A DNA stretch of 64,000 nucleotides, taken from assembly GCF_037042905.1 (NCBI RefSeq), contig NC_087257.1, forward strand, positions 13,392,001 to 13,456,000. Direction: 5' to 3'. A program made the translations under genes and the position numbers. The DNA comes from Lytechinus pictus. Its lineage: Eukaryota. The notes under the pieces were generated by a model, which did no database searches, was not told where the DNA came from, and saw only the letters and a list, made by a program, of their open reading frames with translations. Shown here in pieces: positions 19,165 to 56,075 of this stretch; the stretch's first letter is position 1; each line of letters starts with the position of its first letter.

Positions 19165-21164
19165 CCTTCTCTTCCTAATTCTTTCTTTTTTCGTATTTTC
19201 TTATTCTCTTCCATCTTTCCTTTACTCCTTTTCCTTTTTTTCTCATCTCATTCAATATTCAATGTCGCCACATCATCACATACAAAATAAATTGGCATAT
19301 TCAGCAGAACTCACAAACATCACTGCAGTTTAAAACCCAAAGTTTTGACATGGGAGTATATATAGTGACATACATTATTGGGTTAAGGGAAACTTAATCC
19401 TTGGACAGAATTGAAAGTGAAAGAAACAGATTTCCAGTATTAAGCTTTTATTCAACTTAAATAAAACAAACTGGATTAAAGAACACAGATTTTTTTTCTG
19501 ATCTAACAACCTTCACAAAAGAATTCTTAGTACACATTATTACAACACATGAAAACTCACACTGTATGCATATTCATTGTAAGAGTTGTGGTCATGTGAC
19601 TGTGCATGATGCCATAGTTAAGCAACTATCCAAATGTTTTGTCATATATAGAGTGAACTTCCTAACTTTCAATTGGAGAAATGTTGCTTACTGTTATGAG
19701 TGTGTAGAAACACACTATCCTTCATAATAAACATTGAACATAAAGATAACATGGAAGAAGACTAAGATGAGGAGATAGAAAATGATGCAGAAAGAGAAAA
19801 GAAGTTTGAAAAGTTGTTGCACTGCTTGATCGAGAGAGAGAGAGATAGAGAGAGAGGGAGAGAGGGAGAGAGAGAATGATGCCTGTACAAGTACTATATA
19901 TATATAAATGCAGGAATGCCTGGAATGCTCAGCGGGCACATATGCCAAGTGGTGACCATGTCAACCATTGTTAAACTAGGAAACATGGTTAACAACCTAG
20001 CTGGCACGAGCCTGTCGAGCATCCGAAGCCTGCCCGCATGTATGTTACAGATATTAAAACATAATGTAAAAGAAAAACCTAAAAATACTACATTAATATA
20101 TATAGCCACTGAAGGTACTGAGCTATGATACAGGATAACAAAGCTAAGGAGGGAAATTAAGCAGTTACCCTTAATTATTTAGATAAATATTACTCCTACA
20201 ATGAAATTCCCTCTGAGATTGGTAGAAATAACTTTCAATCTAGACTTGCAAGGCTTTCAGTTACTAACCAATACTCCTAGACAGGTTTTGTCATTTATTA
20301 GGAACAGTTTTACAGGTTTTACAGACAAACTCATGTTCATACCAACTACAGGAAATAATAACTAAAGCAGGGACATCTTTCATAACACTTTCTGTTATCT
20401 CAGTTGAGCGATAAGTCTGTGACATCTTTTTGGGAAGCATCTAGAGAAAGGCCTTATTCATATGTAAGAGTTAATATATCACAATTGCTCCATGCACTAA
20501 TTGCATAATACATAACCTATTTTCACTTTACACATCCCCCCCAAACAAAAATAGAAATAAGTCATGGACTTAATTGTTAACAACTTGAGATAAGAAGGTG
20601 TCATGAGAGCTAGTCCAGGTGCTCTTTTTGGAAGAAAGCAAAAACTCTCAAATGAATGAAACCTTCCTCTCCTTGAAAAAAAAAAAGCATCAGGAGCTGG
20701 AATGAAAATACAACAAAAATTCTCACACAGGGGCATAAATCAGCAAGATTTTCTATTAATCAGGGAAGATGAATAAATACGCCATCATCCCCCTGAACAA
20801 ATGAAAACGCTCGCAGATTTATGCCAGTGCTCACACATACATATGTGATTTTCACGATGTGATAAATATGCAATTTAGGCAACGTTTTTGTAGTAATGAG
20901 CAGACACCAAAGTTCTAACTTTTATGGTGGTGGACTAGAAAAATTCACAAAAATAAAACCATACAATGTGCTACAAAATAGAATTTGACAGAGCTTTTAT
21001 TGCTACCAAACAATATAGTACAGCAATCATTTATCATCAACAAATTAAATGAAATCGAACGATAGTATTCCAACAAAATTTAAATAGCTTTAAATATATT
21101 TGGCTTGTAGTTCTTAATAAGAAATATATTTGAAATATATATGTTTAAAATATAATTCAAAGAA

Positions 21165-21540
21165 AATAGAAGAAAAAAATAGGGAAAAAATATATTTTTT
21201 CCTATTTTTCTTGTCCAAAAAAAAAAATATTTCAAATAGCATAGATTTGGAACAAAAAAAATAGGAAAAAATATATTTCAAAACTATTTGTGGCTTTATT
21301 TTTTTCCTATTTTTGTTCCAAAACTATGCCATTTAAAATATATATTTTTGGGGGGACAAGAAAAATAGGAAAAAATATATTTCAAAACTATTTATGGCTT
21401 TATTTTTTTCCTATTTTTTGTTCCAAAACTATGCTATTTGAAATAGATTTTTTTGGGACGAGAAAAATAGGAAAAAAATATATTTTTGCATTTATTTTTT
21501 CCCTATTTTTTTTCTATTTTTTTCCTATTTATTTTTTACT
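21165..21540. repeat. AT-rich inverted/tandem repeat block (AAAAATAGGAAAAAATATATTT motif in both orientations), probable MITE remnant
   Basis: Motif and its reverse complement alternate through the block. Confidence 0.6.
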
Positions 21541-21944
21541 AGGGTAGGTTCATACTGAGATCTGTATCTTCTCCTCCACCTATACATCCCTGGAGCAAGA
21601 CCTGGATCTCGAGCCCCAATCCCTCCTGGAGTTCGATCGAGACACTGATATGGACCAACTTTGTATCATATGTTTGGTCAAAATCCGCTGAAGGACATTG
21701 CAATGTACATGAGACTGTACGTGTTAACAATATTTCCCAAGTCTAAATTTCACCCTGACCTTTAACCTTGAACTCTGACCTTGAATTTTTGTATTGAGTT
21801 TTGAGACATTGATATGGTGTAACTATATGTACCAAGTTTGGTCAAAATCCGTAGGACATGAGGTCTATCGACTGTTCACTAGATTTGTTATGGACAGATC
21901 AGGACGGAAGGGACCTGCCGTGTGACTGTTGCATATATACTAAC

Positions 21945-22007
21945 CCTTCTTGCTGGTTCCTTCACCACCAGACTTGTGCTCATCGGTGGGTGCCCCACCA
22001 ACACCTC
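21945..22007 (-). CDS. Probable SET-YR exon 6 (GVGGAPTDEHKSGGEGTSKK)
   Basis: tattcag|...|gttagt boundaries; 63 nt; phase 1/1, compatible with exon 5. Confidence 0.55.
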
Positions 22008-22244
22008 CTGAATAATTCAAATATAATATAATATGCTGTGTAACAACTTGTGCCAGTATATTAAAAAAAAAACCAGAGTTAATCTGAGTATATACTGCAA
22101 TCATACAGATATAGTAGGGGAAATAAAGAATCAATTTTAAAATAAAAATTCAATCCTTAATTGGAACTCCACAGATAATCATATAAGCATATGTTGCACA
22201 TTGTGAGAGAATTTTCAACCTAGAAATATAGATATCTTAATGTA

Positions 22245-23587
22245 AACAAGTCAAAGCAAAGCGTAGCATTCCCTCGCAAGGTACAAATATGGCCTATAAG
22301 TTAGCTTCATTAGACTATATACTATTATATTACTATATAGGCAAGGAAGTTATATATATAACCACATTTTCACATATAATTAGGTGTTTTTGCATATTCA
22401 ATGAGCCATGACCTTTCACCTTTGACCTACATACTCAGAAATCAAACTTAGGCTGTATTTTGATACCATGTACCTTCATATTAAATTTCATTAAAATTCG
22501 TCAAACATTACTAAGGTTATCGAATGGAAACCAGATTCGCATACCGGTATTTAATGAGCATCAAGAAATAAGTGAGATTTATTCATGATATTTTGTTTGA
22601 TTAAAAACCATCTTAATAGGCTTTTCCCATGAAGTTGGCGGCATCGAAGATCAGCATGAAAGACAGCAAAGCATCTGGGGAGCGTTTCATCAATATTTTC
22701 ATCTGACAAGTTGTCAGATCTGACATCTTTCTCTGATGTTGATTGGCTGAGAGGTACTGTTACTATGGTAACTGTCGGATAAAATGGGACTTGTCGGATA
22801 AAACGTCCGACAAGTCCTTTCATGAAACGCCCCCCTGGAAAACCACATTTTCACATATCTAATTAGGTATTTTCGCATATGTAATGAGCTATGACCTTTC
22901 ACCTACATGTACATACTCGAACTTAGGCTGTGTTTTGATACCATATACCTTCATATAAAATTTGATTAAAATCCGTCAAACATTATTGAAGTTATATCGA
23001 TCGGAAACCAGATACGCATATTTAATGAGCTATGACCTTTGACCTACATACTCTTAAATCAAACTTGGGCTGTATTTTGATACCATATGTACCTGCATAT
23101 CAAATTTTATTAAAATCCGTCAAACATTACTAAAGTTATGTTTATAAATAATTGAAATTTCTCCCAGGATGCGTTACGTACATAAAAAATTACTAAAGTT
23201 ATTGAACGGAAACCAGATTTGCATATTTAATTAGCTATGATCTTTGTCCTACTGTACATACTCCGAAATCGAACTTAATTATTAGGCTGTGTTTTGATAC
23301 CATGTACTTTAATTCATATCAAATTTCTTTAAAATCTGTCAAACATTACTACAGTTATAATTATCGAACGAAAACCAGATTCACATATTTAATTAGCTAT
23401 AATCTTTGACCTACATACTCAGAAATTGAACTTACGCTGTGTTTTGACCATGTACCTTCATATCAAATTTCATTAAAATCCTTCAAACATTACTAAATTT
23501 ATCGATCGGAAACCAGATTTGTTACGGTAGAACGGACGGCAGCGTTACTAATATCCCCTCCGACTTCATTGGCGAGGGGATATCAAA
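22245..23587. mobile_element. Helentron/DINE-1-like non-autonomous element with an internal ~155-bp tandem array
   Basis: Starts AACAAG; subterminal ATTCCCTCGC; ~5-6 copies of the GCATATTTAATGAGCTATGACCTTTGACCTACATACTC... unit; ends in hairpin ATATCCCCTCCG...GGCGAGGGGATAT followed by A-rich sequence. Confidence 0.7.
22678..22834. mobile_element. PIF/Harbinger-like MITE
   Basis: TIR GGGAGCGTTTCAT / ATGAAACGCCCCC; 3-bp CTG duplication. Confidence 0.65.
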
Positions 23588-23749
23588 CAATTTTATACAA
23601 TATTTTGAGTAAAAAAAAAAAAGTGCTCACTACATTTTTACCATTTCATTCATTATTTGAAAGTTGAATGTTCTGCCTTTTGACATGCAACAGAGTTACG
23701 CATTAATGCAAACAACAACAATAATGCAAACTAGAATATAGGAACTTAC

Positions 23750-26344
23750 CATCAATCTTGCTCAAAGATGCTCCCACTTTTACGACCTCCATCAGAGCAA
23801 GTGGAGCTTGATACGTATTTCTATTCATTTCCTCACTATGACCCATGTGTGAGTAGAAGTACTTCCTCTCAGAGGGTTCCACATCCATTGCTGCATAAAG
23901 TGTGCTTATTCTGTGCCTGTTATGTGTTGCCGTAATGAGAGTAGGCCGCTTCAGGTCAGGAGCTTTTTTGACCACACGATGCACAGCGCGTGCCACCCCG
24001 AAACATGTGAAATTGAACCTTGAGTAGATAAAAAGATGTACTTGTTTCCTTCCAAAATGCCTGCACTTTCACGTACTTCATCATGATCAACTAGATGGAG
24101 AGCTTTATCACAGTCTTCTGGTATCAAGACTGGGACTAATTTCCGTAGACCTTTTCCGGTCTGATACGTAACTTTGTAGTTTCCAAGAGACTTCTTCTCT
24201 GCTGGATTTAGATGTTGGAGTGCTTGTTGATTAATCCAGGTTCCTTCTTTTGCTTCTTTCCACTGATTCCTTGTTAATCTACAGGGTTCACCACCCCTTC
24301 TTGCGTTAAAAAGTGTCAGTCTACTTGCAACTAGGTCACGCAATTCTACATAGTGATCACCTTCATGAACACCATATGTTTCTTTTTCCACTAGCTCTTT
24401 CATTGTGGAGAGGGTGTATTCCCGGACGCTTTGAAGATCTTCTAGAGGGAGCGTTTCTGGCTTTCAAAGTTTCTCAGTACGGGCCTTGCCTACTGCATAG
24501 GTCGCATCACCAAACACAAGGTCATGGTTAAGAATCAGAACCTCATCAAATTTATCCAAGGCATGAGCTGCATCATCATCTTCATTTCCTAGAAATGTGC
24601 CCTTCATGATCTTACACGACCGCTTGATGAGGTAGTATAGTGCAGACTTTAATCCGTACTTCAGGTTCTCTCCTTCCCGACAGTATTCGTTCACGGCAAC
24701 CTTCAGATGTTCAAAATTCCTGCGATTGAACATGTCAAGTGAATAGCCATAGGATTCCAAATAGGAACCCAGTTCATTCTCGGTATCCTTGAAATGGATA
24801 TACAAACTACCCAATCTCCTCATTGAAGTCATTACGCTCTTCTTTACTTCTTCTCTTTTGTCCACTTTTGTTCTCTCCTTCTCCCACAGTTTTCGACCAA
24901 TTATCAGTATCATTTGATCTCTCCTACACAAATAACCTACATCATCGTTTCTGAACAGACACAGAATGTTTATTGTGAAGCTCTCATCGGTTGTGTGTTG
25001 AAAGTCCATGTGCATTAATGTATTGACAGGGATATTTATTGTTGTTCCACACGACTCCTTTGCACATGTTTTTCTATGTCTGCTCAAGAATCGTGAGTTA
25101 TAGAAGCCTTTGCACAGTCCGCACATAATGAGATTGCATTCTTTTTTTGATTTTTTTCTCTTGCTGGAAACATGGATGAGGTTCCCCTAAAATTTCCTTG
25201 TTGTGTTTCAGGATCCCATTCTTCTTGAATTGCGCAAAGATCTCATCACGCTCTTTCTTTGGTAATTCTAGAGCCTTTCTTACATCTTCCCTATCTTTGT
25301 GTCGTAGAGTAATGTGTCGCGATAACTTTGTGTGGGAAATATCACATAAAGGACAATAACGTCTTGTATTATTACTGTTGCCATTCCCTGTCACTTCCTT
25401 TTTTATGGTTTCATTTTGCAATTTCCTTTTTCTTTTAGTGTCGCTGTGATGATCAGTATAGCTCTCCTGTTCATTCTGGCTATCCTCTGACATATGTTCC
25501 GATGAGTGCTCCGACTTATCCTCCGATAGGTGTTCTGACGAGTGCTCTGACTTATCCTCTGAGATGTATTCCGATGTGTCCTTCGGCATGTGCTCCGATT
25601 CGTGCTCTGACATATCCTCTGATAGGTGTTCTGACGAGTGCTCTGACTTATCCTCTGAGATGTATTCCGACGTCTCCTTCGGCATGTGCTCCGATTCTTG
25701 CTCAGACATATCCTCTGATAGGTGTTCTGACGAGTGCTCTGACTTATCCTCTGAGATGTATTCCGACGTCTCCTTCGGCATGTGCTCCGATTCGTGCTCT
25801 GACATATCCTCCGATAGGTGTTCTGACGAGTGCTCTGACTTATCCTCTGAGATGTATTCCGACGTCTCCTTCGGCATGTGCTCCGATTTGTGCTCTGACA
25901 TATCCTCCGATAGGTGTTCTGACGAGTGCTCTGACTTATCCTCTGAGATGTATTCCGGCGTCTCCTTCGGCATGTGTTCCGATTTGTGGTCTGACATATC
26001 CTCCGATAGGTGTTCTGACGAGTGCTCTGACTTATCCTCTGAGATGTATTCCGACAGCTCCTTCGGCATGTGCTCCGATTTGTGCTCTGACATATCCTCC
26101 GATAGGTGTTCTGACGAGTGCTCTGACTTATCCTCTGAGATGTATTCCGTCTCCTTCGGCATGTGCTCCGATTCGTGCTCTGACATATCCTCCGATAGGT
26201 GTTCTGACGAGTGCTCTGACTTATCCTCTGATGAGATGTATTCTGACGTCTCCTTCGGCATGTGCTCCGATTTGTGCTCTGACATACCCGCTGACATGTA
26301 TTCTACTGACACAACTCCAACACCATTCTTTGAGCTGGCATGCC
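23750..26344 (-). pseudogene. SET-YR exon 5: acidic repeats, C2H2/C2HC zinc-finger-like motifs, helical region and tyrosine-recombinase-like catalytic domain
   Basis: cattgcag|...|gtaagt boundaries. ORFs 25098..26312, 24464..25126, 23951..24403 and 23703..23996 are joined by a frameshift (~25150), a TGA at 24464-24466 (EKL*KPETLP) and a 2-bp insertion (~23988). Confidence 0.85.
25480..26290 (-). repeat. Coding 96-bp tandem repeat (~8 copies; SEHKSEHMPKETSEYISEDKSEHSSEHLSEDM)
   Basis: Period 96 seen (e.g. 25591 vs 25687); built from 12-bp SEx-x subunits. Confidence 0.92.
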
Positions 26345-27908
26345 CTGCAATGATTGCAAAAGTTTAGTTCAAGGTCAAATATCAAAACTTTACAATTGTT
26401 TCTCATAGTCCTTTTGCCAAAACCTCAATCTCATTTTTGCAATAATGGAATGAATACAGATATACTCCCGCTATAACGAGCATGGCTACGTGATATTGAC
26501 TTGAAGAGGGGATTTTCCCAGTCTCAATTTCAAACATGCATGCGTGTCTATATATGTTTTCAGTATAACAATTAAGATTTCATTAATATAAGTGGCTTAA
26601 TTGGTCCCGAGCACCTCACAGGAGTGGACATGTGTATGGTAAAATAGCAAGCCCAAGCTTCGTTCACATCAGTGAAAACAAAGAGAAATTACCGTGAATC
26701 ACCTTATAGCGGTGACAATGAACTGCACAATATGGTTGTTTTCCCCATTGAGGTGTCATATGAAAAGGCAGAAAACAAACTATCAGGTCAGCATATTAGT
26801 GGGGGACCTATATAGCTATAAATAGGCTTGGAGTACATGCAAATCTGGCTAAAATTTTGATTTTTGGCACACAAACGGTTATAGCCATTACTGATCAATA
26901 AAAGTGATGGAAGCACTTTTCTAAACCCAATCTAAGGCGGCCATCTTGGATTTCAAAATGGCCGCCATACAAAACGTATTTTCCTCAATATTGGACATTA
27001 AACGAGCTAGAGTTAATTTCAACAGCAAACCCCCATTATCGGAATCAAAAAATCATATGAACAAAGATTAAAAAAGGTCTTATATGCAGAGATGCCAACC
27101 TCTTGACACAACTCCAACACCATTCTTTGAGCTGGCATGCCCTGCAATGATTGCAAAAGTTTAGTTCAAGGTCAAATATCAAAACTTTACAATTGTTTCT
27201 CATAGTCCTTTTGCCAAAACCTCAATCTCATTTTTGCAATAATGGAATGAATACAGATATACTCCCGCTATAACGAGCATGGCTACGTGATATTGACTTG
27301 AAGAGGGGATTTTCCCAGTCTCAATTTCAAACATGCATGCGTGTCTATATATGTTTTCAGTATAACAATTAAGATTTCATTAATATAAGTGGCTTAATTG
27401 GTCCCGAGCACCTCACAGGAGTGGACATGTGTATGGTAAAATAGCAAGCCCAAGCTTCGTTCACATCGGTGAAAACAAAGAGAAATTACCGTGAATCTCC
27501 TTATAGCGGTGACAATGAACTGCACAATATGGTTGTTTTCCCCATTGAGGTGTCATATGAAAAGGCAGAAAACAAACTATCAGGTCAGCATATTAGTGGG
27601 GGACCTATATAGCTATAAATAGGCTTGGAGTACATGCAAATCTGGCTAAAATTTTGATTTTTGGCACACAAACGGTTATAGCCATTACTGATCAATAAAA
27701 GTGATGGAAGCACTTTTCTAAACCCAATCTAAGGCGGCCATCTTGGATTTCAAAATGGCCGCCATACAAAACGTATTTTCCTCAATATTGGACATTAAAC
27801 GAGCTAGAGTTAATTTCAACAGCAAACCCCCATTATCGGAATCAAAATATCATATGAACAAAGATTAAAAAAGGTCTTATATGCAGAGATGCCAACCTCT
27901 TGACACAA
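26307..27908 (+). repeat. 797-bp tandem duplication (26307-27103, 27104-27900) with TGACACAA junction microhomology
   Basis: Copies differ at about 3 positions; TGACACAA occurs at 26307, 27104 and 27901. Confidence 0.92.
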
Positions 27909-28703
27909 AAAAAAACACATGACGAAAAACTCTTCGTTTAAAATTGAAACCCCTAGAGCTGAGATATAGCATTAAGCCTAAAGTAAACACTAGCTCTGTC
28001 CAATGTAATCCCCCCCCCCCACACACACCGAGACCTTGAAGGGGTGATAGAGAGGGAGAGAGAGAGATATATATATATATATATATAAGCATGATATAGA
28101 GGGAGAGAGGAAGGGAGAAAGTGTGATAGTTTTCAGAGTTAAAATGTTTGTTATAATTATATCGCCAATTCTGGGTCATTTTGCTTCGTTCGAACATTCA
28201 TTTTGGTCTTCATCTAAATTATGAGTGACTTTTGGACATGAAAATATCTTAAAGATAAAGACCAGTTCTGGTTTTGTGATTGCATTGTGAAAGAATCGTT
28301 GTGGAATCGATCAGAAAAGGTTGATCATCTAGCATATAGGTGTGTACTGCAAGGTTCTGGAATCATCAAAATGATAAGAAAAATGGGACTACGCGACCAC
28401 ATGCGCGATATCTATTTGGTCCCAATAGATATAATAATTTACCAAATATATCAATTAGTAGGCGGTTTCCCGACTTTCCCGGCAAAATTTGTATCATCAC
28501 GTATTAGTCAAAACATATTCTTTCACATGATTGGTAATACCTTTATACCTTTATACCGCATCTACTGGAAAAATACAGTTGTTCCTGCAGTCAAGTTTCC
28601 AGGTCTATCTTGTTGTCTTCCTAGCTTGGATAAGTTCGAAAACTGAGTCTGTGCTATTTGTGCAATGTGCTGTGCCAATTAATGTATTGGAATGAAATAG
28701 GCA

Positions 28704-31700
28704 CTATTCCCATGCGTGAACATAATGCCACGCAGACCAGAACTTGTCTAACTTTGTCTTGAAGCCATTGATTGTTGATGCTGTGACTACCTCAGTAGGC
28801 AAAGAGTTCCAGTCATTAACCACTCTAACACTGAAGGTGTTTTGTCTCACTGCCAGTCTACTCCTTTTCAAAAATAGCTTGTAAGGGTGGCCACGCGTTG
28901 CTTGAGTGGTAGCTGATGTGAAGAATAGGTCTCTATTCACATCATCAATGCCATAAATTATTTTATAGGTTTGTATCATGTCTCCTCTGCGCAGTCTGTA
29001 CTTGATGGAGGGTAATTTCATTTCACGCAGTCTTCTGCCATAGTCCATTTCTTTCAGGGCTGGTACTAGCTTGGTCGCTCGTCGCTGGACTTTCTCAATA
29101 GCCTTCAAGTCAGAAGCATATCTTGGGTACCATATTCCATTCGCATATTCAAGAATTGGTCTCACGAGTGACTTGTACAACCTTTTGATGTTTTCTTTGT
29201 CTCTATGCAAGAAAGTGCGTCGAATCATAGCAAGCACACGATTAGCTTTCAAGACTGCGTTGGCTACTTGGGAATGGAATTTCAGTTGAGAGTCCATAAT
29301 GACTCCCAAGTCTTTTTCCTCTGAAACTTCCTCCAGCACATCTCCATCTAGATGATACTGATGATGGGTATTCTGTTGACCTAGATGGAGGGATCTGCAC
29401 TTTGTTGTATTAAACTGGAGCTGCCACTTCTTGGACCACTCAGCTAAGTTGTCTAAGTCAGCTTGTAGCCTGTCATAGTCATCTTCCATTCTGATCTCTC
29501 TGAAGAGTTTGGTGTCGTCAGCGTATATCTTTACGATACTGCTTACTACTTCAGGGAGATCGTTGATGAATACCACAAAAACTGTCGGTCCGAGGACACT
29601 ACCCTGAGGCACTCCACTTCTAACAGGTAACCACTGTGAAGTTTTTCCATTCACGACGACTCTCTGCCTCCGATGGGTCAAGAAGCTGTAAAGCCATTTC
29701 CCCAGACTACCTGTTATACCATAGGATCTGAGTTTGTTCATCAGTCGTTCATGGGGCACAGAATCGAAAGCTTTACAGAAATCAAAGTAGATGGTATCAA
29801 CTTCACATCCTTCATCAAGAGAGGCAGTCCACAATTCCATGACTTCAAGCAGTTGTGTGACACAAGACCTTCCTGGTAGATCCGTGTTGTGCATCACACA
29901 ATAAGTCATTCTGAATAAGTTGATTGAGAATGGCATCACGCACAACAGATTCCATGATCTTTCCGATAACTGAAGTCAGGCTTATTGGTCTGTAGTTTTC
30001 AACAGCATCCTTCTTTCCTTTCTTATGTATTGGTGTGATATTTGCATCTTTCCATGACTGCGGGAGATTACCTTCTTTCAAGGACTTTCTGAAGATAAGT
30101 GCAAGAGGTGTGCAAATTGTTCCAGCAGTTTATTTTAGAACTCTCGGGTGAAATCCATCAGGTCCAGCTGATTTTGAACTTTTCAGCAATTTCAGTTTGT
30201 TCTTTACATTACTTGTGGTAATGTCCAGATCAGTTAGGAGATTACCCTTATGTCTATCTTCCAAAGTTGGAATCTGCTGCACATTTTCATCTGTAAATAC
30301 ACTGTTGAAGAAGAGGTTAAAGAGTTCTGCTTTGTCCTCGTCATTCTCAGCAGTGGTTCCATGTTTATTTTTCATGACCCCAAAATTAGCTCTGCATCTT
30401 CTTGAGCTATTTGCATATCTCCAGAAGGCTTTGGGGTTAGACTTGATATTGTTTGCAATGTCCTTTTCAAACTTCCTGCGAAGATTCCTCGTCATTTTAC
30501 GAAGTTTGATGGCCTCTTTTCTTGATCGCTGATAGTCGACATCATCTCCACTGTCACGAAATCTTTTCCAAGATCTCTGTTTCTTCTTGTGTTGTCTGAT
30601 AGCTTCCTTTGTCATCCAGAGTTTCTTCTTTTTTAGCCTAACCCCTGTGGTTTTAGGGATGTGTTGGTCTATTGTTGCTTGATAGATGGTTGAGAAGAAG
30701 TTCCATGACTCATCTACATTCATAGATTCCAGTTCACTACACCAATCTATGTCAATGATGGCATCATTCATTGCCTGGTAGTCGCCTTTATGGTATCGAT
30801 ACCTTTCTTCTTTTCTCAATGTTTGTTCGGCATACAATTTCACATGAATAAGGATACATTGATGATCGCTTAGACCCAGGCCAGGTAAGTAAGAGATATT
30901 TCCAATCATTCCTTCCTCATTAGTGATCAATAGGTCCAGTATATGTGGTTGTTGTCCTGTCCGGTATCGTGTGCACTCATCTATATATGCTGATGGAGGA
31001 AACAGTCACTCAAGCAGTCGATAAACTTCTGTTCATGTGAATGATGGGATGTCCAGTTCTCCCAGTTGATGTTTGGGTAATTAAAGTCACCAACGATGAT
31101 AAGGTGCGAAGGATTGCTATCTGCAACTTTACACAGCATCTCAGTCATCATATCAGTAGTTGACATATATATGTTTGGAGTTGGACTACGGTAAATGCAT
31201 CCCAGAGTTAATGAGTCCATTCCCTTCAGCTTCATATTTATCCACACACAATCGTTGAAGTTTGACTCAAAAAATATTTCCTTGACTAAAGTAGCATAAC
31301 GTTTGTGCACATACACCAAGACTCCTCTTACATCTTCTTTGTCAATGTTTAAAAACTGGACATAGTCTTCAAGCTGATAATTTTGCACAGTCAGCTTGAT
31401 ATCACAATTTTTGGGCAGGCATTCACAGATGACAATAATATCAATAGTTCGTTGTTCCAGCAGCAGGGAAAGTTCATCCAGTTTGTTGAGTAGGCAGTCA
31501 CTATTGGTATACAAAATTTTCAATTGTCCAATATTGGAGTCGGCACCTGCTTTCCTGTGCGTCTCGCCAAACTCTCCTTCGCTTACTGTGTCATCATCAG
31601 TCAAACGCCTCTCATCAGATTCTTCTTCTGTTTCTGTTTCGGTATCATCTGAGTTAGTTTCTCCTGTTTCTGAATTATCATCATTTTCTTCATCTTCTGT

Positions 31701-33104
31701 ATCTGCTTCTTCAGAGTTAAATTCCTCACCCTCTATATCAGTATTATCTGAGTCAATTTCTCCTATTACTGAATTTCCAATATCAGAGTCAATATCTCCA
31801 ATTTCTGCATGAATTGAGACAATTTCCTCAATATCTCTGTCTGCATCGTAGTCATTTACCTCCGTAGGATCTGAGTCTATTTCTCTAATTTCTGTGTTTG
31901 GAATGTCAAAGTCACGGTCTCCAGTTTCCGCAGTGTTTGCATCAATTTCTCTATCATAAGTATCAACAAGTACATCAAGTATTGTACGTGCATCAATTGA
32001 GAGAATTTCTCCCATGTCTGTGTCAGAGTCCTTATCTCCATTTGAGTCAGATTCTTTAGTGTTTCTTTTTGCATTAGATTCCTCTATATCTTTCTCCACT
32101 TCTGCATCAGATTTGTCCATTTCTTTCTCCATTTCTGAATCAGGTCTCTCTATTTCTGCATCACTTTTGTCGATTTCTTTCTCTATTTCTGTATCAGATT
32201 TATCTATTTCTTTCTCAATTTCTGTAGGAGACTCCTCTATTTCTGTCTCTATTTTTGCATCAAATTTGGCTATTTCTTTCTCAATTTCTGTATCAGTTAT
32301 GTATTTTTCTTTCTCAATTACTGGATCAGACTCCTTGATTTCTTCCTCTATTTCTGCATCAAATTGCTCTATTTCTTTCTCTATTTTGGCCTTGGATTTG
32401 TCCATTTTATTCTCAAATTCTGCATTGGACTTGTCTATTTCTTTCTCCATTTCAATGTCAGATTCCTCTATTTCTTCCTTCATTTCTACCTTAATAGATT
32501 CCTCTATTTCTTTCTCCACTTCTGCATCTGGTTCTTCTATTTCATTATCCATTTCTGCATCGGATTTGTCCACATATACTCCTTTCTCCATTTCTGTATT
32601 AACAGACTCCTCTATTTCTGCCTTCGATTCCTCTAATTCTTTCTCCATTATGGAATTGAATAGGTTTATTTCTGTCTCCATTTCTGCATCCGATTCCTCT
32701 ATTACTTCCTCCATTTCAGCATTGGATTTGTCTATTTCATCCTTAATTTCTACTTTGGATTTGTCTAGTCGTTTCTCCATTTCTGTAACAGACTCCTCTA
32801 TTTCTGTCTCCATTTCTGCCTTCGATTCCTCAATTTCTTTCTCCATTTCTCCATTGAATTTGATCATTTCTGAATCAGATACCTCAATTTCTTTCTCCAT
32901 TTCGGCATTGGATTTGTCTATTTCTTTCTCTATTTCTGCACCAGACTCCTCTGTTTCTACCTTAGATTCTTCTATTTCTTTCTCTGGTTCTGCATGTGAT
33001 TTGTCTATTTCTTTCTCCATTTCTGCATCAGATTCTTCTATTTCATCTAAATGTACTTGAGCAGATACTTTTAAAAGAAATGTCTGGTTTGTTCTTGATT
33101 CCAA
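28704..33104 (-). pseudogene. LINE ORF2 (acidic N-terminal extension, endonuclease, reverse transcriptase), interrupted
   Basis: YTNSD, CIYRSP, GDFN, SDH, GPDG, YRPISLTS, DFCKAFD, GVPQGSVLGP, YADD. Frameshifts near 30983 and 29880; stop at 30130-30132. Confidence 0.92.
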
Positions 33105-46229: not shown

Positions 46230-46494
46230 TGTATGTTTCTGTAAGTCTTCTTGCATTCTTCCGATTAGTTGAGAATAATATGGTGTATTCCAATTGTGTC
46301 CCTGTGGAAGCCCATAGTCATATAAGATTTCAGACTTGGCTGGAATGTCTTTCATAGCATACAGGCAGAGAACAGGTTTTCCGTCTACCGTTTTAGCTGT
46401 CATTTTGCTGTTTTGTTCCTTTCCTTTGCTATGATTGACAAGTCTTCCAAGTTGGCACTTGGACTTGGGATCAGGCTCATCTGTAGCATCGACA
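46230..46494 (-). CDS. SET-YR exon 3, SET catalytic core (CVDAT...LGRLVNHS...EILYDYG)
   Basis: tttcag|...|gtaagt boundaries; ORF 46215..46505; canonical SET NHS and YDYG motifs. Confidence 0.9.
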
Positions 46495-47275
46495 CTGAAA
46501 TGCAATACAAAAACAAAATTTAAAAAACATAGTGGAAGTCAAATGAAGGTAATTTTAGGGAGTTGTTAGAGTAATACAGACAACACGTATTCAGCTAGAG
46601 TTAGACCACAAGAAATAGCCAGCTGATTGGGAAAAAGTCTGCTTCTCTACCATTACCACAGAAAGGCGACTCTGGAGAGCAACCACAATACATCCATTTT
46701 GATGAAAGTGCACTCGGAATTCTTTATCACTCAAGTCAATTGTTTATTTTACCATTGAACAGCATGAAATATATTATGTAATAGCACTTCCTCAGGCAAT
46801 GTGTCTTGCCTGGTATAGCGCCATCTACTGCTGTGCACACTTGATACACACTCAGAAGTCACCATGCCCACCCACTTTTTTTACTGGAGGGGCATGGCCC
46901 CCTACTATATTGGTCAGTGAATTTTTGTTTTGTCGGAACATTTCATATTGTGAAGACAAAATATTTTATGTACCAACGAAAGTATACAAAGAAATGACTT
47001 AAAATGTGAAAGTACTAACAAATTCAAATCTCGCTCGCTCCGTTAGCTCGCTCGCATTCAATCTTGTATTAGGGTGTCTGAACGATTTTTCAATTTTCCC
47101 TTTTGGATCGTTTTTCACCATTTTGGTTGGATAATTGAAAAAATTATTTACTCAGAATAATACATTTCAAATTTCAAGACTCTTCGATGTTTCTATCAAA
47201 AGTTACAGCCCCTTCAATTCCCTACAATATTCATCCATTTTTTGTAAGAATCGACGAAAAAGACGTATACCGTAA

Positions 47276-48750: not shown

Positions 48751-48922
48751 CAAAGTGCGATTCTTTTATTTGTCATGGGGTTTATCCACTTGAAGAAATA
48801 GCGGAATCCAGTCTGTTCCATTGCCTCCCTCCCATCTCCTTCCTCTCCTGTTATAAGCTCCCCAATATAGCAAAGGAGAAATTCTCCTTTAACCCTGCCT
48901 ATTTGTGTAATGACAGCTCGGC
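48751..48922 (-). CDS. SET-YR exon 2 (RAVITQIGRVKGEFLLCYIGELIT...FRYFFKW...IAL)
   Basis: tttgcag|...|gtaagt boundaries; 172 nt; not in the ORF track; matches the SETD8-type G.F..EY.G.LI...Y.F pattern. Confidence 0.85.
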
Positions 48923-49160
48923 CTGCAAATTAAGAATATAAATTATGCAAGTAATATTACATGTACTGTATATGTTAATAGTTGGTACCATTGTACATTA
49001 ACTGGTAGTCATAATTGTTGTCCCATATGTACGAATATGTGATGTTTTGACTGCTGATTTTTTTTATACTGTTGTTGCGCATATGCCGCACCCAGACTTT
49101 TTGATATTTTCTCTTCCGAAAATACTCAGGCCTTTACGCCGGCAAATACGGTACATGTAT

Positions 49161-50807: not shown

Positions 50808-53800
50808 CTATGAACGTTCAGATTCCTTCATTAGCAGAACAAGCTTTGTCACAGGTCTTTTCAGTTTTGTACCGTCCGCGAATCTCACGTCCACTACTCT
50901 GACGAGGTCATCTTTTCCTGGGTAGACACACGTGACTTCCGCCATCTTCCAGGAGCCGCGCTTCAGGTTCTCACCGATGACGAGTACGATGTCCCTCTCT
51001 CCTAAGTTCTCAGCAGATTTCTGCCACTTCTGGCGTGGTGAGAGTTTGTGGATGCACTCCATCCAACGTCGCCAAAACCCATCTACCATGAAATTGCAGA
51101 TCTCCCTACGTTTCCGGTGGTTTCCTTTGTATTCTTCACACGGGACTTCGGGGCATGGTAAGTCACCTCTACCTATCAGGAAGTGGTTTGGCGTTAGTGG
51201 AGGATGATCCGGTGACGATGATTTTGCAGTTAGGGGTCGACCATTGATCAGGCTGGATATCTGGCAGAAAACAGTCTCCCACTCGACGAAAGTCAAACGA
51301 TCAGCTATCACCAGGTGTCTCATACCTTTCTTAACTTCTTGGACCAATCGTTCAACGGCCCCCTGGTGGTGAGGTCCTCCTGGAGGTCCGAATTTCCACT
51401 GAACATTGTACCGTTGGCAATGGTCCTTCAGTACTGTCTGATTCAGTTTCAAGTTCAGTTCATTGATGGTGTTATCAGCTCCTCTGAAGGCAGTGCCATT
51501 ATCGCTGACCAGCAAGGATGGCGCCCCTCTGATGCTTATGAACCGTTCTAGTGCCTGTAGGAACGCTTGTGTAGACAGGTCTTGAACACAGGTGAGGTGC
51601 ACGGCTCTGGTCACTGCACACGTGAACACAGCACAGTAGCCCTTTGTCGTGGTATTCCGGTTCAGCTTTACATTCACTGGTCCAAGGTAATCAACCAATG
51701 TAGTCTTGAATGGGGGTGAGCAAGGAGTGACTCGGAATTCTGGCAAGTCGGCCATCTTCTGTTGAATTGGCTTGCCTCTGTGTCTCCTGCATACGACACA
51801 GTCGTACACCACGCGTTTGGATATGTTCACGTCTCCGACAATCCAGTAATGCTTCCTAACTTCTGTTGCCGTTCTCAAGTGACCCCCGTGAAGGGCATGT
51901 GCATGTCTATCTCTCACGATCAGCAGACTGATGTGGCTCTTCTTAGGGAGAAGATAAGGATGTCGCACATCATATGACAATGGAGCCCTGTCAATTCGTC
52001 CGCCAACACGGAAGACTTGGTCTTCTTCATCGAAGAATGGGTCCAGTTTCATGATGTTAGGATCCTGGAAGTCAACATCTCGCTGTGCTTGTCTTATCCA
52101 GTATAATTCAGCCTCCTTGACAAGTTTTGGAGAAGGGTACATAGAGATCTGTTTTGCGAGCTGCTTCAGCCATTGGTTCTTGGGCAGTTTTTTCACGGAG
52201 AGAACTCTAGCGGTCACCATCTTTAACCTGCACCAGCTGGAGAACTTGGTTGAGTCAACTATCGGAGAAGGCTTAGAGACGACGTTGATTCTGAGAGCCA
52301 GTGTCTTGGCATTCCGGACATGGAATTTTTTCTGTTCTTCGTCTCCAAGGCTCACAGGAACATTTTCTGGTGTCTTTGGCCAAAACGTAGGTGATTGCTT
52401 CAAGTACAGTGGTCCCTCAATGACTTGTCTCATTTCATTGGCAGTTCCTCCTCTGGAAACCAGATCGATAACATTCTGATCTGATGGTACATATGCAATG
52501 TCCTTGATGGGGTCGAACTCTGTTGTGATCTCGCCAACACGATATGCGACGTAGGACCGGAAGGACTTGGATTGACCTCTTACCCAGCTAATGGCAGTCA
52601 TGCTGTCTGTCCAGATCTTGGAATAGGCGATGTTGAGCCGCAAGGCTTTCTTCACAGTAAGCATGAGCCTCGACAACAGAAGGATCGCCTAAAGTTCCTT
52701 TCGAGGAATGCTAGACTGCTTCAGTGGAGTGAGTTTGGCTTTTGCACATACAAATGATAGATGTGCTTCAGTGTCCTCAGGGTGAGACCATCGTAGCCAA
52801 ACACCAATACCCATGGCATCTTCTGAAGCATCGCTTGCTCCGTGCAGGGACACTTCTGGTAAAGGCCTTATCCCCTTGAAAGGCTCTGGGATCAAGCACC
52901 TTGGAATCTCAATGCTAGCTACCTCCTCAAAGTCTCTATTGATGTCTCGTAGAATGGCACAAAGCTCACCCTTGTCGTTGAGAGGGGTAACCCAGTCTAG
53001 GTTTAGCTGCCATAGCTTTTGCAGGAGAATCTTCGGTCTAACGAGGAGCCCAGATAACATGCCAAACACATCGTAATACGAAGCAGTTTGGGCCAGGATA
53101 TTGCACTTGGTAGGAACAAGTAGAGTCGACTTCACCTCCTTTACCCTCAACGTGTCTTTTGAGAGGTTCCATTTAGTGCCCAGGGCAGTGGCATCTGTGC
53201 TGTCTTCTGTTTCGTCGCAGGCTTCTGTCGCATTCGATTGCCATTTTCTGATGGTGAAGTTGCCTTTCTGAAGAGTCTTGCTAAGCTTAGATTTGAGCTC
53301 TAGAGCCTCTGGGACATTAGTGCCAGATTCATTGAGGTCATCAACGTAGAACTGCCTGGCAACCACTTCCTTGAGTTTGTCGTCTTCCGGTGCATGTTCA
53401 TCTACCACATGTCTAAGGGTGACTATAGTGGCAGTTGGTGAGGGCTTGTCCCCAAAGGTGACAGTTGTCAGTTCGTAGACTTGAATTGGGTGGCTAGAAT
53501 TCTCTCGAAACACAAACCTGTGGAATCGAGCATCATCAGATTTGATTTTTATGGCTTGAAACATCTTGCTGACGTCTGCAATGATGCCCACCTCGTTCTC
53601 TCTGAACCTCAGGGCAACTTCAAAGAGATCAGAGTTGATATTCTCACCTTTCATGAGGTAGTCATTCAATGAGTGGCCCTGGAACCTGGCCTTCGCGTCA
53701 TATACCACTCTGACAGGAGTTGTCTTCGAGTCCTTGGTGACAGCGAAATGTGGCAGGAACCACATCTTTTTTCCAGTGCTTCTGTCTCGCTGTAGCTCCT

Positions 53801-56075
53801 CTTCTGAGACATGGCGCGAAACACCCCTCTTTAACTGGTCTCTCATCTGTCTACAGTAGATGTCCCAATCTTCATGCCTGTTTTTGAACTGATTCTCAAG
53901 GCTTCTCAACCTTTTGACAGCATAGTTGTAGTTGTCCGGCAGGTCATCGGGTGACTTCCTCCATGGCAGTCTGACTTCGTACGATCCATCAGAAAGCTGA
54001 GTTACGCTCCGTTGCATTGCCTCAGTTGCTTCTTTGTCCAATACATCTGAGGAGCACTTACACTTCTTGGGCTCCAGACCCACAGTCTCCAGACCTATGA
54101 ACTCTTCCAATGGTCCAATGGCTGACACATTGATGTAGTTCAGCAGTGAAGTTGAACTTGTAGACCGTCCTCCTTGAACAAACCAGCCAAAGGGGCATCT
54201 TACAGCGACAGGATCATCAAACTTTTCGCCAAGGATGTATTCTTCCCAGATCATCAAGTGTGTGTTGTCCACACCAAGGAGTCCGTCGATGGTTTCGGAT
54301 GGGGCAGCATGGATATCAATGGCGCTCAGATGCTCATACTGCCGAAGCTGTTCTGGTAGTACAATAGGAGTATCACCGCAGGGTTGATTTATCTCTGTCA
54401 TGGTTAAAGGACATGACCAATTCCCTGCAATATCTTCAATGTAGCAGTCGAACAGTCTCAATTTCCTTGTTATCTTGCTGCCACCAACAAGACTCAGATC
54501 ATGGTCCTGGAAAAGGCCTCTCTCTGTCCTTGGAAGAATCCCTTCCCTTAACAGTGTAGCTTGGCTGCCACCATCCAACAGGATGCGCACCAGGTGCCGG
54601 ACATCGCCACATCGTAGATAACCAACAACAGTAGGTAAAGTGCTTTGAAGCTTCCCTGTCTCGTTGGTGTGGGCTGTTGTCACGTTGATTGAGGTTGAAC
54701 GTGGAGATTCCATAGTGTTGCGTGTTTGGTTTGCAGGACCTTGACCACTCTCTCCGTATATGACAGGGCAGACAGCTGCGAAGTGTGAGTCACTGCCACA
54801 CGTTTGGACTCTGCATGGAGCAACAAACTGACAAGAGTTTTGGTCATGTGGAGGCTTGCCAGCAACACAGTTGTTATGCCCACATCGGTAACAGATACCA
54901 TTCTTTCTCATTACTTTATATTTCTCATTCTGTGGCAGGCTCTTGAACTTGTTGCAGGTCTTCAAGTAGTGCGAGTCTGCATTGGGGTGGATGGCACACT
55001 TGGCGACCCCGGAGTGTCTGGCCTTGCTTGGTTGGCTCTGGTTATCAGAAGTATATGAAGCAGCGCTTGTAGACTTATACACCTTATGTTGTCTTTGTGG
55101 AGGGCCAGGCGAATTGTCCCCACTGTTAGGCTTCGCCTTCTCGAGCAGCAAAAGTTGGCTGTATAACCACTTGACCAGACCGGTGAGGGAATCATCAATC
55201 CTGTCATCTCTAACACCTTTATAATATGCGATGCGGTGTTCCTCTGGGAGCTTCTGCTTAATCTGACTCAACATGATCTTACTGTTAAGCTCTCCAGATA
55301 GGCCAATGGTCTCAGCTTGGGTTTCGAAGTTTTGAAGAGTCTGGACAAAATGACCCATGGCGGGGAGGTTTGTTTTGCCTTTGATCTCGTATGTCCTCAG
55401 GTTCTCTAGATCTTTTAGTAGGCTGTCTACTACTTTGTCCTGATCGCCGTAACACTCATCAAGTACCTGCCAGGCTCGTTCAACACTAATGCACCCTTTG
55501 ATTTTGTCGCGTTCTTTGACATTAATCATTGATTCGGTCAGTTGATGGAAGCATTCCATCTCTGTTAACTCTGTTGCACAGTGGGTGAACAATTCTTTGA
55601 AACGCTTGTAGTCTCGAAGGTTCCCATTGAAAGTTGGGAATCTCATTCTTGCCATTCTTGGAGCAGCCGACGTAGCGGTGTGGGGCATAGGAGATGGCGC
55701 ATATGAAGCTGGACTGGATCTTGGATGTGGAATTGTAGGTGAAGAGGGGAGAAACTGTTGATTGTCCAGGGGAGATTGAGACTGACGGTCGACGACCCTC
55801 CTTCCCCGTATTAACACCTGGACGTACTCATTTTCACATTCTCCCATCCATTTCTCCTCCACCTCATACTCTCTCTGATCTTCGATGATATCCATCAGCG
55901 CCGAATGTTTCTCTTCCACTTTCTCAAATTGTTGCTCAGCTTTAGTGATGTATTTCTTTAACATGTCTAGATCACCAACGGCATCTGTTGTAAGGCTGTC
56001 AATTGTCGATAATGTTTGCGTCAACTGACCCTTGATGTTTCGTCTTGATAGCTTCAACTTGTTGACGTCAGCCAT
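50808..56075 (-). pseudogene. BEL/Pao gag-pol polyprotein with one in-frame stop
   Basis: FPTFNG; CYRCG..; LLDGGSQ; LPHFAV..KTTPVRVVYDA; YVDD; SDASEDA; SIPRKEL*A (TAG at 52689-52691, same frame continues); SDNGT; LTPNHFLIG; RPVTKL. Confidence 0.93.

What the first reader, a model, noticed from the sequence alone, without database searches (positions are those of the whole stretch)
23750..24403. Complete-looking YR catalytic constellation with a variant HxxR box
Seen: LTLFNARRGGEPCRL (candidate box I Arg, ~24290-24310), GKGLRKLVPVLIP (candidate Lys strand), KYIF, ITATHNRHRIST (TxxRH in place of HxxRH, ~23910-23930) and HMGHSEEMNRNTYQ (box II His and candidate Tyr nucleophile, ~23810-23846). 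Inference: the ancestor was catalytically active. No reverse transcriptase belongs to it, which favours a Crypton-like DNA element over DIRS.
Basis: partly seen in the sequence, partly recalled or inferred. Interest (0 to 1): 0.7.

Follow-up and report, generated by a model that had tools for sequence, protein, structure and literature searches.

The report
Decayed recombinase gene with threonine active-site variant
This sea-urchin stretch is a recently broken but still transcribed copy of a little-described, widespread marine-animal jumping-gene family whose cut-and-paste enzyme always carries threonine where relatives carry a histidine; some family members also carry a histone-marking domain.

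Summary
On the minus strand, 24403-23750 encodes a tyrosine-recombinase (YR) catalytic domain. Arg I, Glu, Lys, Arg II, His and Tyr are all present, and Thr sits at the His-II position of the HxxR box.

The Thr is not decay. About 230 homologues carry Thr (213) or Ser (9) there and none carries His. The other catalytic columns are 95-100% conserved. A confident model (pLDDT 92) matches XerA, XerH and Cre (Z 13.4 to 10.8). A profile alignment puts the six residues on XerD R148, K172, H244, R247, H270 and Y279.

The window copy is a pseudogene with one in-frame TGA and two frameshifts. Contigs of a sister Lytechinus lack both frameshift insertions, so the decay is recent. Contigs also show a GT..AG splice from 23749/50 to 22006.

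The YR is one exon of a larger architecture: KMT5A-like SET, acidic repeats, two zinc fingers, YR, and a C-terminal domain. This is found in echinoderms, cnidarians, molluscs and a tunicate. No relative has a reverse transcriptase. Three dispersed Hydra copies are 98.5-99% identical with unrelated flanks, so the family is or recently was mobile.

It is Crypton-like in the broad sense but fails the CryptonA (DUF3504) test. The scan had already met this family on another piece of this genome (s1-294485) and on this window (s1-319998).

The parts
48786..48929 (-). upstream SET-domain exon piece (matches aa 38-85 of the crinoid relative P0130)
   Evidence: tblastn, 37.5% identity, E 6e-6. P0130 has an exon boundary at a similar point in its SET domain.
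46308..46505 (-). SET-domain exon piece (C-terminal half of a KMT5A/PR-Set7-like SET domain)
   Evidence: Pfam SET, E 1.5e-8. tblastn to P0130 aa 92-151, 48% identity, E 1.4e-12. A relative's SET domain hits KMT5A/SETD8 at E 2e-30.
25491..26286 (-). coding acidic linker made of 8.3 tandem copies of a 96-bp unit (SEHxSEHLSEDMSEH..)
   Evidence: TRF score 1390, 94% matches. It is in frame with finger 1.
25146..25367 (-). zinc finger 1 (CxxC..H..H) plus a short helical stretch
   Evidence: Translation. tblastn to the same region of more than 20 relatives.
25151..25157 (-). frameshift site: a run of 7 A. The sister-species contig has one base fewer, which keeps finger 1 and finger 2 in one frame.
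   Evidence: The window state is confirmed by run X3, of the window's own species label.
24467..25126 (-). zinc finger 2 (CxxC..H..C) and the helical core-binding-type domain
   Evidence: P0001 is 52% identical over it. The model aligns this part to the N-domains of Cre and Tn1549 Int.
24464..24466 (-). in-frame TGA at a position that is Arg (LRKP) in at least 90% of homologues
23997..24463 (-). first part of the YR catalytic domain: Arg I 24296-98, Glu 24287-89, hairpin Lys 24152-54
23986..23989 (-). frameshift site: cgcg. The sister-species contig has two bases fewer, giving the ..SGWHAVHRVV.. reading seen in P0002.
23750..23984 (-). second part of the YR catalytic domain: Thr (His-II position) 23925-27, Arg II 23916-18, His 23913-15, His III 23838-40, Tyr 23811-13
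22007..23749 (-). intron (GT..AG on the minus strand), filled with high-copy repeats
   Evidence: The joint 23749->22006 appears in contigs of two runs. An intron directly after the YR domain is also seen in S. purpuratus P0136 and in Hydra.
21945..22006 (-). 62-nt micro-exon encoding a Gly/Ser-rich linker, followed by another GT donor

Best explanation
The stretch is the catalytic exon of a recently inactivated copy of a YR-encoding, RT-less ('Crypton-like') DNA element family of marine metazoans. In full form the family protein has five parts: a KMT5A-like SET domain, a low-complexity linker, two zinc fingers, a two-domain tyrosine recombinase, and a conserved C-terminal domain of about 70 aa. 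Intact members most likely move as proposed for Cryptons, by YR-catalysed excision and re-integration through a 3'-phosphotyrosyl intermediate. Arg I, Lys, Arg II, His III and Tyr would do the chemistry. A Thr or Ser hydroxyl (or water) would stand in for the dispensable His II. The fingers, the core-binding domain and the C-terminal domain would bind DNA. Where present, the SET domain would act on or dock to nucleosomes. Shown here: the fold, the residue mapping, family-wide conservation, absence of RT, recent dispersed copies in Hydra, and the breaks and splicing in this copy. Inferred: catalytic activity, the excision/integration route, and the role of SET.
For: Fold: the AF2 model has pLDDT 92 and pTM 0.84. 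Every top PDB match is a YR or topoisomerase IB: XerA Z 13.4, XerH 13.2, IntI 11.9, and Cre 10.8 over 262 residues. Residue mapping: hhalign against 80 XerD relatives maps R163, K211, T286, R289, H315 and Y326 onto XerD R148, K172, H244, R247, H270 and Y279. Conservation in 88 homologues: R 88/88, E 87/88, K 84/88, T 79/88 plus S 3, R 84/86, H 83/83, Y 82/83. In about 230 proteins the count is T 213 and S 9, with no His. All substitutions of the equivalent Cre His289 except D, E, K, R and W retain recombination in vivo, and His II is only 87% conserved (PMC2943603). Architecture: SET-finger-YR-C-terminal proteins occur in Anneissia, Hydra, Haliotis and Diadema, and the parts lie contiguous on a 3.7-kb contig. 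The window's SET exons match them. Mobility: clusters at 90% identity or more hold 4-7 loci on different chromosomes in Hydra, Apostichopus and S. purpuratus. Three Hydra loci share 4.6-5.7 kb at 98.5-99% identity with unrelated flanks and one gene only. The tree shows several deep lineages per echinoderm genome and class-incongruent pairs. Decay is recent: the sister-species contig is 99% identical and lacks both frameshift insertions.
Against: No element ends, target-site features or further close copies were defined in this genome. The window holds one copy. The known L. pictus paralogues found here are 45-52% identical to the window copy or to its close relative P0002. The locus looks gene-like: it spans at least 27 kb with large introns, is spliced, and is present in two Lytechinus species. 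Styela and Hydractinia show a single locus with many isoforms. Raw RNA reads gave almost no depth on the exon. Activity of a Thr-bearing YR has not been assayed. Active-site geometry could not be measured because model coordinates are not exposed. The sequence link to PF00589 is weak: 9 of 88 members, best E 1.7e-5, and none for the window pieces.
Confidence: 0.7

Rival explanations
1. It is a member, here a young pseudogene, of a host gene family derived long ago from such an element. The family would be kept for a cellular function, such as chromatin-linked DNA binding or programmed recombination, and would no longer be mobile in echinoderms.
For: The gene structure is spliced with long introns. 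An intron directly after the YR domain is shared by the window, S. purpuratus P0136 and Hydra. The locus is present and spliced in two Lytechinus species. Styela and Hydractinia have single-locus genes with many isoforms and intact catalytic residues. L. pictus paralogues are old, at 45-52% identity to the window copy or to P0002.
Against: Near-identical dispersed copies with unrelated flanks exist in Hydra. Multi-locus clusters at 90% identity or more exist in S. purpuratus and Apostichopus. Many truncated or broken copies exist, and the tree has class-incongruent pairs. Known domesticated Crypton genes have lost the catalytic residues (PMC3212892), whereas here they are kept.
Confidence: 0.2
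2. The Thr for His II marks a catalytically dead, DNA-binding-only recombinase fold.
For: His II is part of the canonical R-H-R-Y tetrad. The Pfam integrase model barely recognises the family.
Against: A dead enzyme would not keep Arg I, Glu, Lys, Arg II, His III and Tyr at 95-100% across phyla. Most substitutions at Cre His289 are active, and topoisomerase IB works without an equivalent residue. Fresh copies in Hydra imply a working mobility function.
Confidence: 0.08
3. It is the YR remnant of a DIRS/Ngaro-type retroelement whose RT part was lost.
For: DIRS and Ngaro elements are the other YR carriers in animals. RT ORFs lie in the same window on the same strand (28.7-33.1 kb and 50.8-56.1 kb).
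Against: Those RTs belong to a LINE (Exo_endo_phos + RVT_1) and a BEL/Pao element (Peptidase_A17 + RVT + rve). None of about 200 relatives up to 1,116 aa shows an RT domain. None of the loci L001-L006 and L090-L097 shows an RT gene. The copies retain introns, so they are DNA-level copies.
Confidence: 0.03

Closest known systems
Crypton DNA transposons (Goodwin 2003; Kojima & Jurka 2011, PMC3212892)
   Same: Eukaryotic elements whose only mobility enzyme is a tyrosine recombinase. They have no RT and no LTR or TIR, can carry introns and extra domains, and are patchy and multi-lineage in marine animals.
   Different: The YR is not recognised as DUF3504 (the CryptonA signature), and there is no GCR1_C domain (CryptonF). 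Animal Cryptons are described as lacking a C-terminal domain, whereas this family has one, plus two N-terminal fingers and often a SET domain. His of the R-H-R-Y tetrad is Thr or Ser. The Hydra copies end in (TA)n tracts.
Xer-type bacterial/archaeal recombinases (XerA, XerH, XerD)
   Same: These are the best structural matches (Z 13). Motif grammar is the same: ..R..E..L, GKG..LVP, ..xxRH..T, GH........Y. His-to-Tyr spacing is also the same.
   Different: Sequence identity is 16-20%. His II is replaced by Thr. The N-terminal helical domain is much larger and carries zinc fingers. The setting is a eukaryotic gene with introns.
SETMAR (SET domain fused to a mariner transposase in primates)
   Same: A histone-methyltransferase SET domain and a transposase-type enzyme sit in one protein.
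   Different: SETMAR is a host fusion of a host SET gene with a DDE transposase. Here the SET domain is KMT5A-like, is joined to a tyrosine recombinase, and appears to travel with the multi-copy element.
Domesticated Crypton genes (DUF3504: ZMYM2-4, QRICH1, KCTD1, KIAA1958)
   Same: A YR fold embedded in spliced animal genes.
   Different: Those genes have lost the Tyr and Arg II. This family keeps every catalytic residue except His II, and it does not match DUF3504.

Membership tests
Tyrosine recombinase superfamily (DNA breaking-rejoining fold, Pfam clan of PF00589) | Two-domain fold: helical core-binding domain plus catalytic domain | tested here: met
   The model has pLDDT 92. VIA gives XerA Z 13.4 (176 aa, rmsd 3.7), XerH 13.2, Tn1549 Int 11.1 over 260 aa and Cre 10.8 over 262 aa. 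All top Foldseek hits in PDB and BFVD are YRs.
Tyrosine recombinase superfamily (DNA breaking-rejoining fold, Pfam clan of PF00589) | Catalytic Arg I, Lys, Arg II, His/Trp III and Tyr nucleophile at homologous positions | tested here: met
   hhalign maps them onto XerD R148, K172, R247, H270 and Y279. They are 95-100% conserved. All are present in the window.
Tyrosine recombinase superfamily (DNA breaking-rejoining fold, Pfam clan of PF00589) | His II of the HxxR box (R-H-R-Y tetrad) | tested here: not met
   The position is Thr in the window. Family-wide it is Thr 213 and Ser 9 of about 230, never His. His II is the least conserved pentad residue (87%) and is dispensable in Cre.
Tyrosine recombinase superfamily (DNA breaking-rejoining fold, Pfam clan of PF00589) | Significant match to Pfam PF00589 | tested here: inconclusive
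   The window pieces and P0002 have no hit even at E 1-10. Of 88 homologues, 9 hit, with best E 1.7e-5.
Tyrosine recombinase superfamily (DNA breaking-rejoining fold, Pfam clan of PF00589) | Catalytic residues clustered around one pocket in 3D | not testable with these tools
   Model coordinates are not exposed. There is only indirect support. Lys sits in the turn of the hairpin E203-209/E216-222. Thr and Arg sit at the start of helix 285-298. Tyr lies just before helix 331-346.
Crypton (YR-only DNA transposon, broad sense) | YR without RT/RNase H in the element | tested here: met
   No RT domain in relatives up to 1,116 aa. No RT in loci L001-L006 and L090-L097. The window RTs belong to a LINE and a BEL/Pao element.
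Crypton (YR-only DNA transposon, broad sense) | Dispersed multi-copy with young copies (mobility) | tested here: inconclusive
   Met in Hydra: three loci at 98.5-99% identity over 4.6-5.7 kb with unrelated flanks. Multi-locus clusters at 90% identity or more occur in three species. Not shown in the window's own genome, where one copy lies in the window.
Crypton (YR-only DNA transposon, broad sense) | No TIR/LTR; short direct repeats at the termini | tested here: inconclusive
   The Hydra copies begin and end in (TA)n tracts. Exact ends cannot be fixed from three copies with different truncations.
CryptonA | YR domain recognised as DUF3504 (PF12012); no C-terminal domain | tested here: not met
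   DUF3504 is not among the Pfam hits of P0002 at E 10. It is also not among the 25 most-hit families listed (of 35) for the 88 members at E 0.1. A conserved C-terminal domain is present in many members.
CryptonF | GCR1_C DNA-binding domain after the YR | tested here: not met
   The C-terminal parts of P0004 and P0048 give no GCR1_C hit.
DIRS/Ngaro/PAT YR retroelements | RT/RNase H (and gag) in the same unit | tested here: not met
   The copies also retain introns.
Starship 'Captain' (DUF3435) | DUF3435 YR; giant fungal cargo element | tested here: not met
   No DUF3435 hit in the Pfam scans. The family is found in metazoans, and the unit is about 5-6 kb in Hydra.

The most novel reading that the evidence does not exclude
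This is an unnamed, metazoan-wide superfamily of tyrosine-recombinase DNA transposons, separate from Crypton A/F/I/S. It is defined by a Thr/Ser in place of His II, twin N-terminal zinc fingers and a private C-terminal domain. One branch carries its own KMT5A-type (H4K20) histone methyltransferase. The family is still transposing in Hydra, with (TA)n tracts as its ends or targets.
Probability: 0.45. Interest if true: 0.7.

Novelty: new variant of a known kind. Interest (0 to 1): 0.55.

Why it matters
YR-only transposons of animals are few and poorly understood, and none has been shown to transpose in vitro. This family offers intact, apparently recent copies in Hydra for such tests. It also offers a natural experiment on the His II position of the recombinase active site. 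And it is a case of a mobile element that brings a chromatin-writing domain with its recombinase, the mirror image of the host fusion SETMAR. For genome annotation it explains many 'uncharacterized protein' gene models in echinoderms, cnidarians, molluscs and tunicates. The window copy itself is an ordinary young pseudogene.

Tried and rejected
- Pfam on the four window ORF pieces found nothing useful.
- phmmer of the pieces and of P0002, and hmmsearch of the family profile, against PDB sequences found no YR. The only hits were spurious alphaRep and zinc-finger matches.
- hhalign of the family profile against the single lambda Int sequence failed. It worked only against a profile of 80 XerD relatives.
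- tblastn of the catalytic part against phage records found no match.
- I searched for the conserved C-terminal domain in the window with an HMM on six-frame pieces. There was no credible hit on the minus strand; the best hit, E 0.1, is on the wrong strand at 21785-21922. In S. purpuratus this domain is split into small exons 18-30 kb downstream, so it may be missed or lie outside the window.
- P0025 loci L001-L004 turned out to be one locus sampled four times, so they are useless for element ends.
- P0002 and P0019 gave no DNA.
- Literature searches for CryptonV, 'Crypton + SET domain' and 'tyrosine recombinase + SET domain + transposon' found no description of this family. The ALOG/DIRS-like class (PMC3537659) is a different family, reported as absent from Hydra and Strongylocentrotus.

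Full report
**1. What is in the sequence**

The finding lies on the minus strand. Three-frame translation of 26500-23600 shows one long decayed reading frame. In order it contains:
- an acidic linker encoded by 8.3 tandem copies of a 96-bp unit (25491-26286);
- a CxxC..H..H finger;
- a frameshift;
- a second finger (CxxC..H..C);
- about 200 residues of helical domain;
- an in-frame TGA (24464-24466);
- the first half of a recombinase catalytic domain;
- a second frameshift (about 23986-23996);
- the second half of the domain, ending ..KIDG directly before gtaagt.

The codons are:
- Arg I: 24296-98
- Glu: 24287-89
- Lys (GKG): 24152-54
- Thr: 23925-27
- Arg II: 23916-18
- His: 23913-15
- His III: 23838-40
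- Tyr: 23811-13

The window holds one copy only. The genome is a Lytechinus sea urchin.

**2. Is it a tyrosine recombinase, and is TxxRH real?**

Pfam sees nothing in the window pieces. The middle piece finds an L. pictus protein (P0001) and an intact 370-aa paralogue (P0002) that is 84-89% identical over the recombinase part. P0002 finds 128 relatives.

In an alignment of 88 relatives (A1) the candidate catalytic columns are almost invariant:
- Arg I: 88/88
- Glu: 87/88
- Lys: 84/88
- Arg II: 84/86
- His III: 83/83
- Tyr: 82/83

The HxxR 'His' column is Thr in 79 and Ser in 3. Over all roughly 230 proteins collected, it is Thr 213 and Ser 9, with no His. The Ser cases form a group that includes the mollusc proteins P0178 (Haliotis) and P0106 (Dreissena).

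An AlphaFold model of P0002 built with A1 is confident (pLDDT 92, pTM 0.84). All its best PDB and viral matches are tyrosine recombinases or type IB topoisomerases:
- XerA: Z 13.4
- XerH: Z 13.2
- integron integrase: Z 11.9
- Tn1549 Int: Z 11.1 over 260 residues
- Cre: Z 10.8 over 262 residues

So both the core-binding and the catalytic domain are present.

For a residue-level test I fetched E. coli xerD by reference and 80 relatives, and ran hhalign against A1 (E 0.004, 252 columns). Family R163, K211, T286, R289, H315 and Y326 fall on XerD R148, K172, H244, R247, H270 and Y279. The XerD numbering was checked.

The variant box is therefore a fixed family character, not decay of this copy. It is compatible with catalysis. 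In Cre every substitution of the equivalent His289 except D, E, K, R and W still recombines in vivo. His II is only 87% conserved among YRs, and topoisomerase IB has no equivalent residue (PMC2943603).

Direct 3D clustering of the six residues could not be measured, because coordinates are not exposed. The secondary-structure positions are the expected ones.

**3. State of this copy**

Contigs of public runs laid on 20500-26400 show three things.

First, a joint 23749/50->22006 with GT..AG on the minus strand appears in one run of each of two Lytechinus species labels. So ..KIDG|gt is a used splice donor. It is followed by a 62-nt micro-exon (22006-21945) encoding a Gly/Ser-rich linker and then another donor.

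Second, the run that is letter-identical to the window (X3) confirms both frameshifts.

Third, the contig of the other species (X1, 99% identical) has one base fewer in the A7 run at 25151-25157 and two fewer in cgcg at 23986-23989. These are exactly the two frameshift sites. With the shorter forms the reading matches the homologues.

The state of the TGA codon in that species was not shown. Raw RNA-seq reads gave almost no depth on the exon, so expression is low at best.

The breaks are thus younger than the split of two closely related species.

**4. The larger unit**

A search with a 638-aa sea-cucumber relative found longer proteins (830-1,075 aa) in crinoids, sea urchins, brittle star, sea cucumbers, Hydra, Hydractinia, abalone and Styela. 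Several carry an N-terminal SET domain of the KMT5A/SETD8 type (E 2e-30). Many carry a conserved C-terminal domain of about 70 aa after a low-complexity linker. On a 3.7-kb contig the SET, finger and YR ORFs are contiguous.

The window has two SET exon pieces upstream on the same strand (48929-48786 and 46505-46308). They match these relatives, with an exon boundary where the crinoid gene has one.

The intron directly after the YR domain is shared with S. purpuratus P0136 and with Hydra copies.

The C-terminal domain was not found in the window.

**5. Mobile element or gene?**

No relative or locus carries a reverse transcriptase. The two RTs in the window belong to a LINE and a BEL/Pao element with their own integration enzymes.

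Clusters at 90% identity or more contain several loci on different chromosomes in Hydra, Apostichopus and S. purpuratus. Three Hydra loci share 4.6-5.7 kb at 98.5-99% nucleotide identity. They have unrelated flanks, a single gene and (TA)n tracts at the shared ends.

The family tree shows at least three deep lineages, each spanning several echinoderm classes. It also shows class-incongruent sister pairs.

This is the pattern of a DNA-level mobile element that keeps its introns. Gene-like traits remain: long introns, presence in two Lytechinus species, and single loci in Styela and Hydractinia. So a partly domesticated family remains a live rival.

**6. Comparison with known families**

It works like a Crypton, meaning YR only and no RT. 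But it fails the CryptonA signature (no DUF3504 match) and the CryptonF signature (no GCR1_C). It also has domains that animal Cryptons are reported to lack (PMC3212892).

I found no paper describing a SET-YR element. This is a search of one library, not proof of absence.

The scan had already met the family. Note s1-294485 reports it on another piece of the genome as SET-repeat-ZnF-YR-Myb. Note s1-319998 reports it on this window. Their architecture agrees with what I found independently in homologues.

**7. Verdict**

The new points are:
- Thr/Ser at His II is a family hallmark.
- The copy decayed very recently.
- It is spliced.
- The family is widespread and recently mobile in Hydra.

This is a new variant of a known kind of element, of moderate interest.

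Noticed in passing
window 22076-23651: The intron after the YR exon is filled with high-copy repeats. They include a 144-bp tandem unit at 22874-23139 and reach depths of thousands in contigs of organism A, with clear raw RNA-seq signal. Many internal 'skip' and 'go back' joints suggest rearranged repeat copies elsewhere in the genome.
   Followed up: no
window 22673-22837: A segment of about 165 nt has very high depth in the RNA run of organism B (about 500 on each strand). Variable loose ends on both sides suggest a short, very abundant, transcribed interspersed repeat.
   Followed up: no
window 26221-27960: A unit of about 797 bp is duplicated in tandem just upstream of the acidic-repeat exon. 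The same ORF sets recur at 26221-26916 and 27019-27713.
   Followed up: no
window 28704-33104 and 50808-56075: A non-LTR LINE (endonuclease + RVT_1, with a long acidic N-terminal extension) and a BEL/Pao element (Peptidase_A17, RVT, rve, DUF5641) lie on the same strand. Both are inside the presumed introns between the SET exons and the finger-YR exon.
   Followed up: partly
L095:9364-15585 (Hydra vulgaris CP147937), L096, L097: The Hydra relatives are units of about 5-6 kb, 98.5-99% identical, on two chromosomes. Their shared sequence starts and ends in long (TA)n tracts. One copy lacks the first 474 bp and another lacks the last 1.15 kb or so.
   Followed up: partly
window 21195-21534: A 104-bp AT-rich tandem repeat (2.6-2.8 copies) lies downstream of the micro-exon.
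   Followed up: no
window 21785-21922 (+): A weak match (E 0.1) to the start of the family's C-terminal domain (..YQVWSKSVGHEVYRLF..) lies on the opposite strand. It is probably chance.
   Followed up: partly
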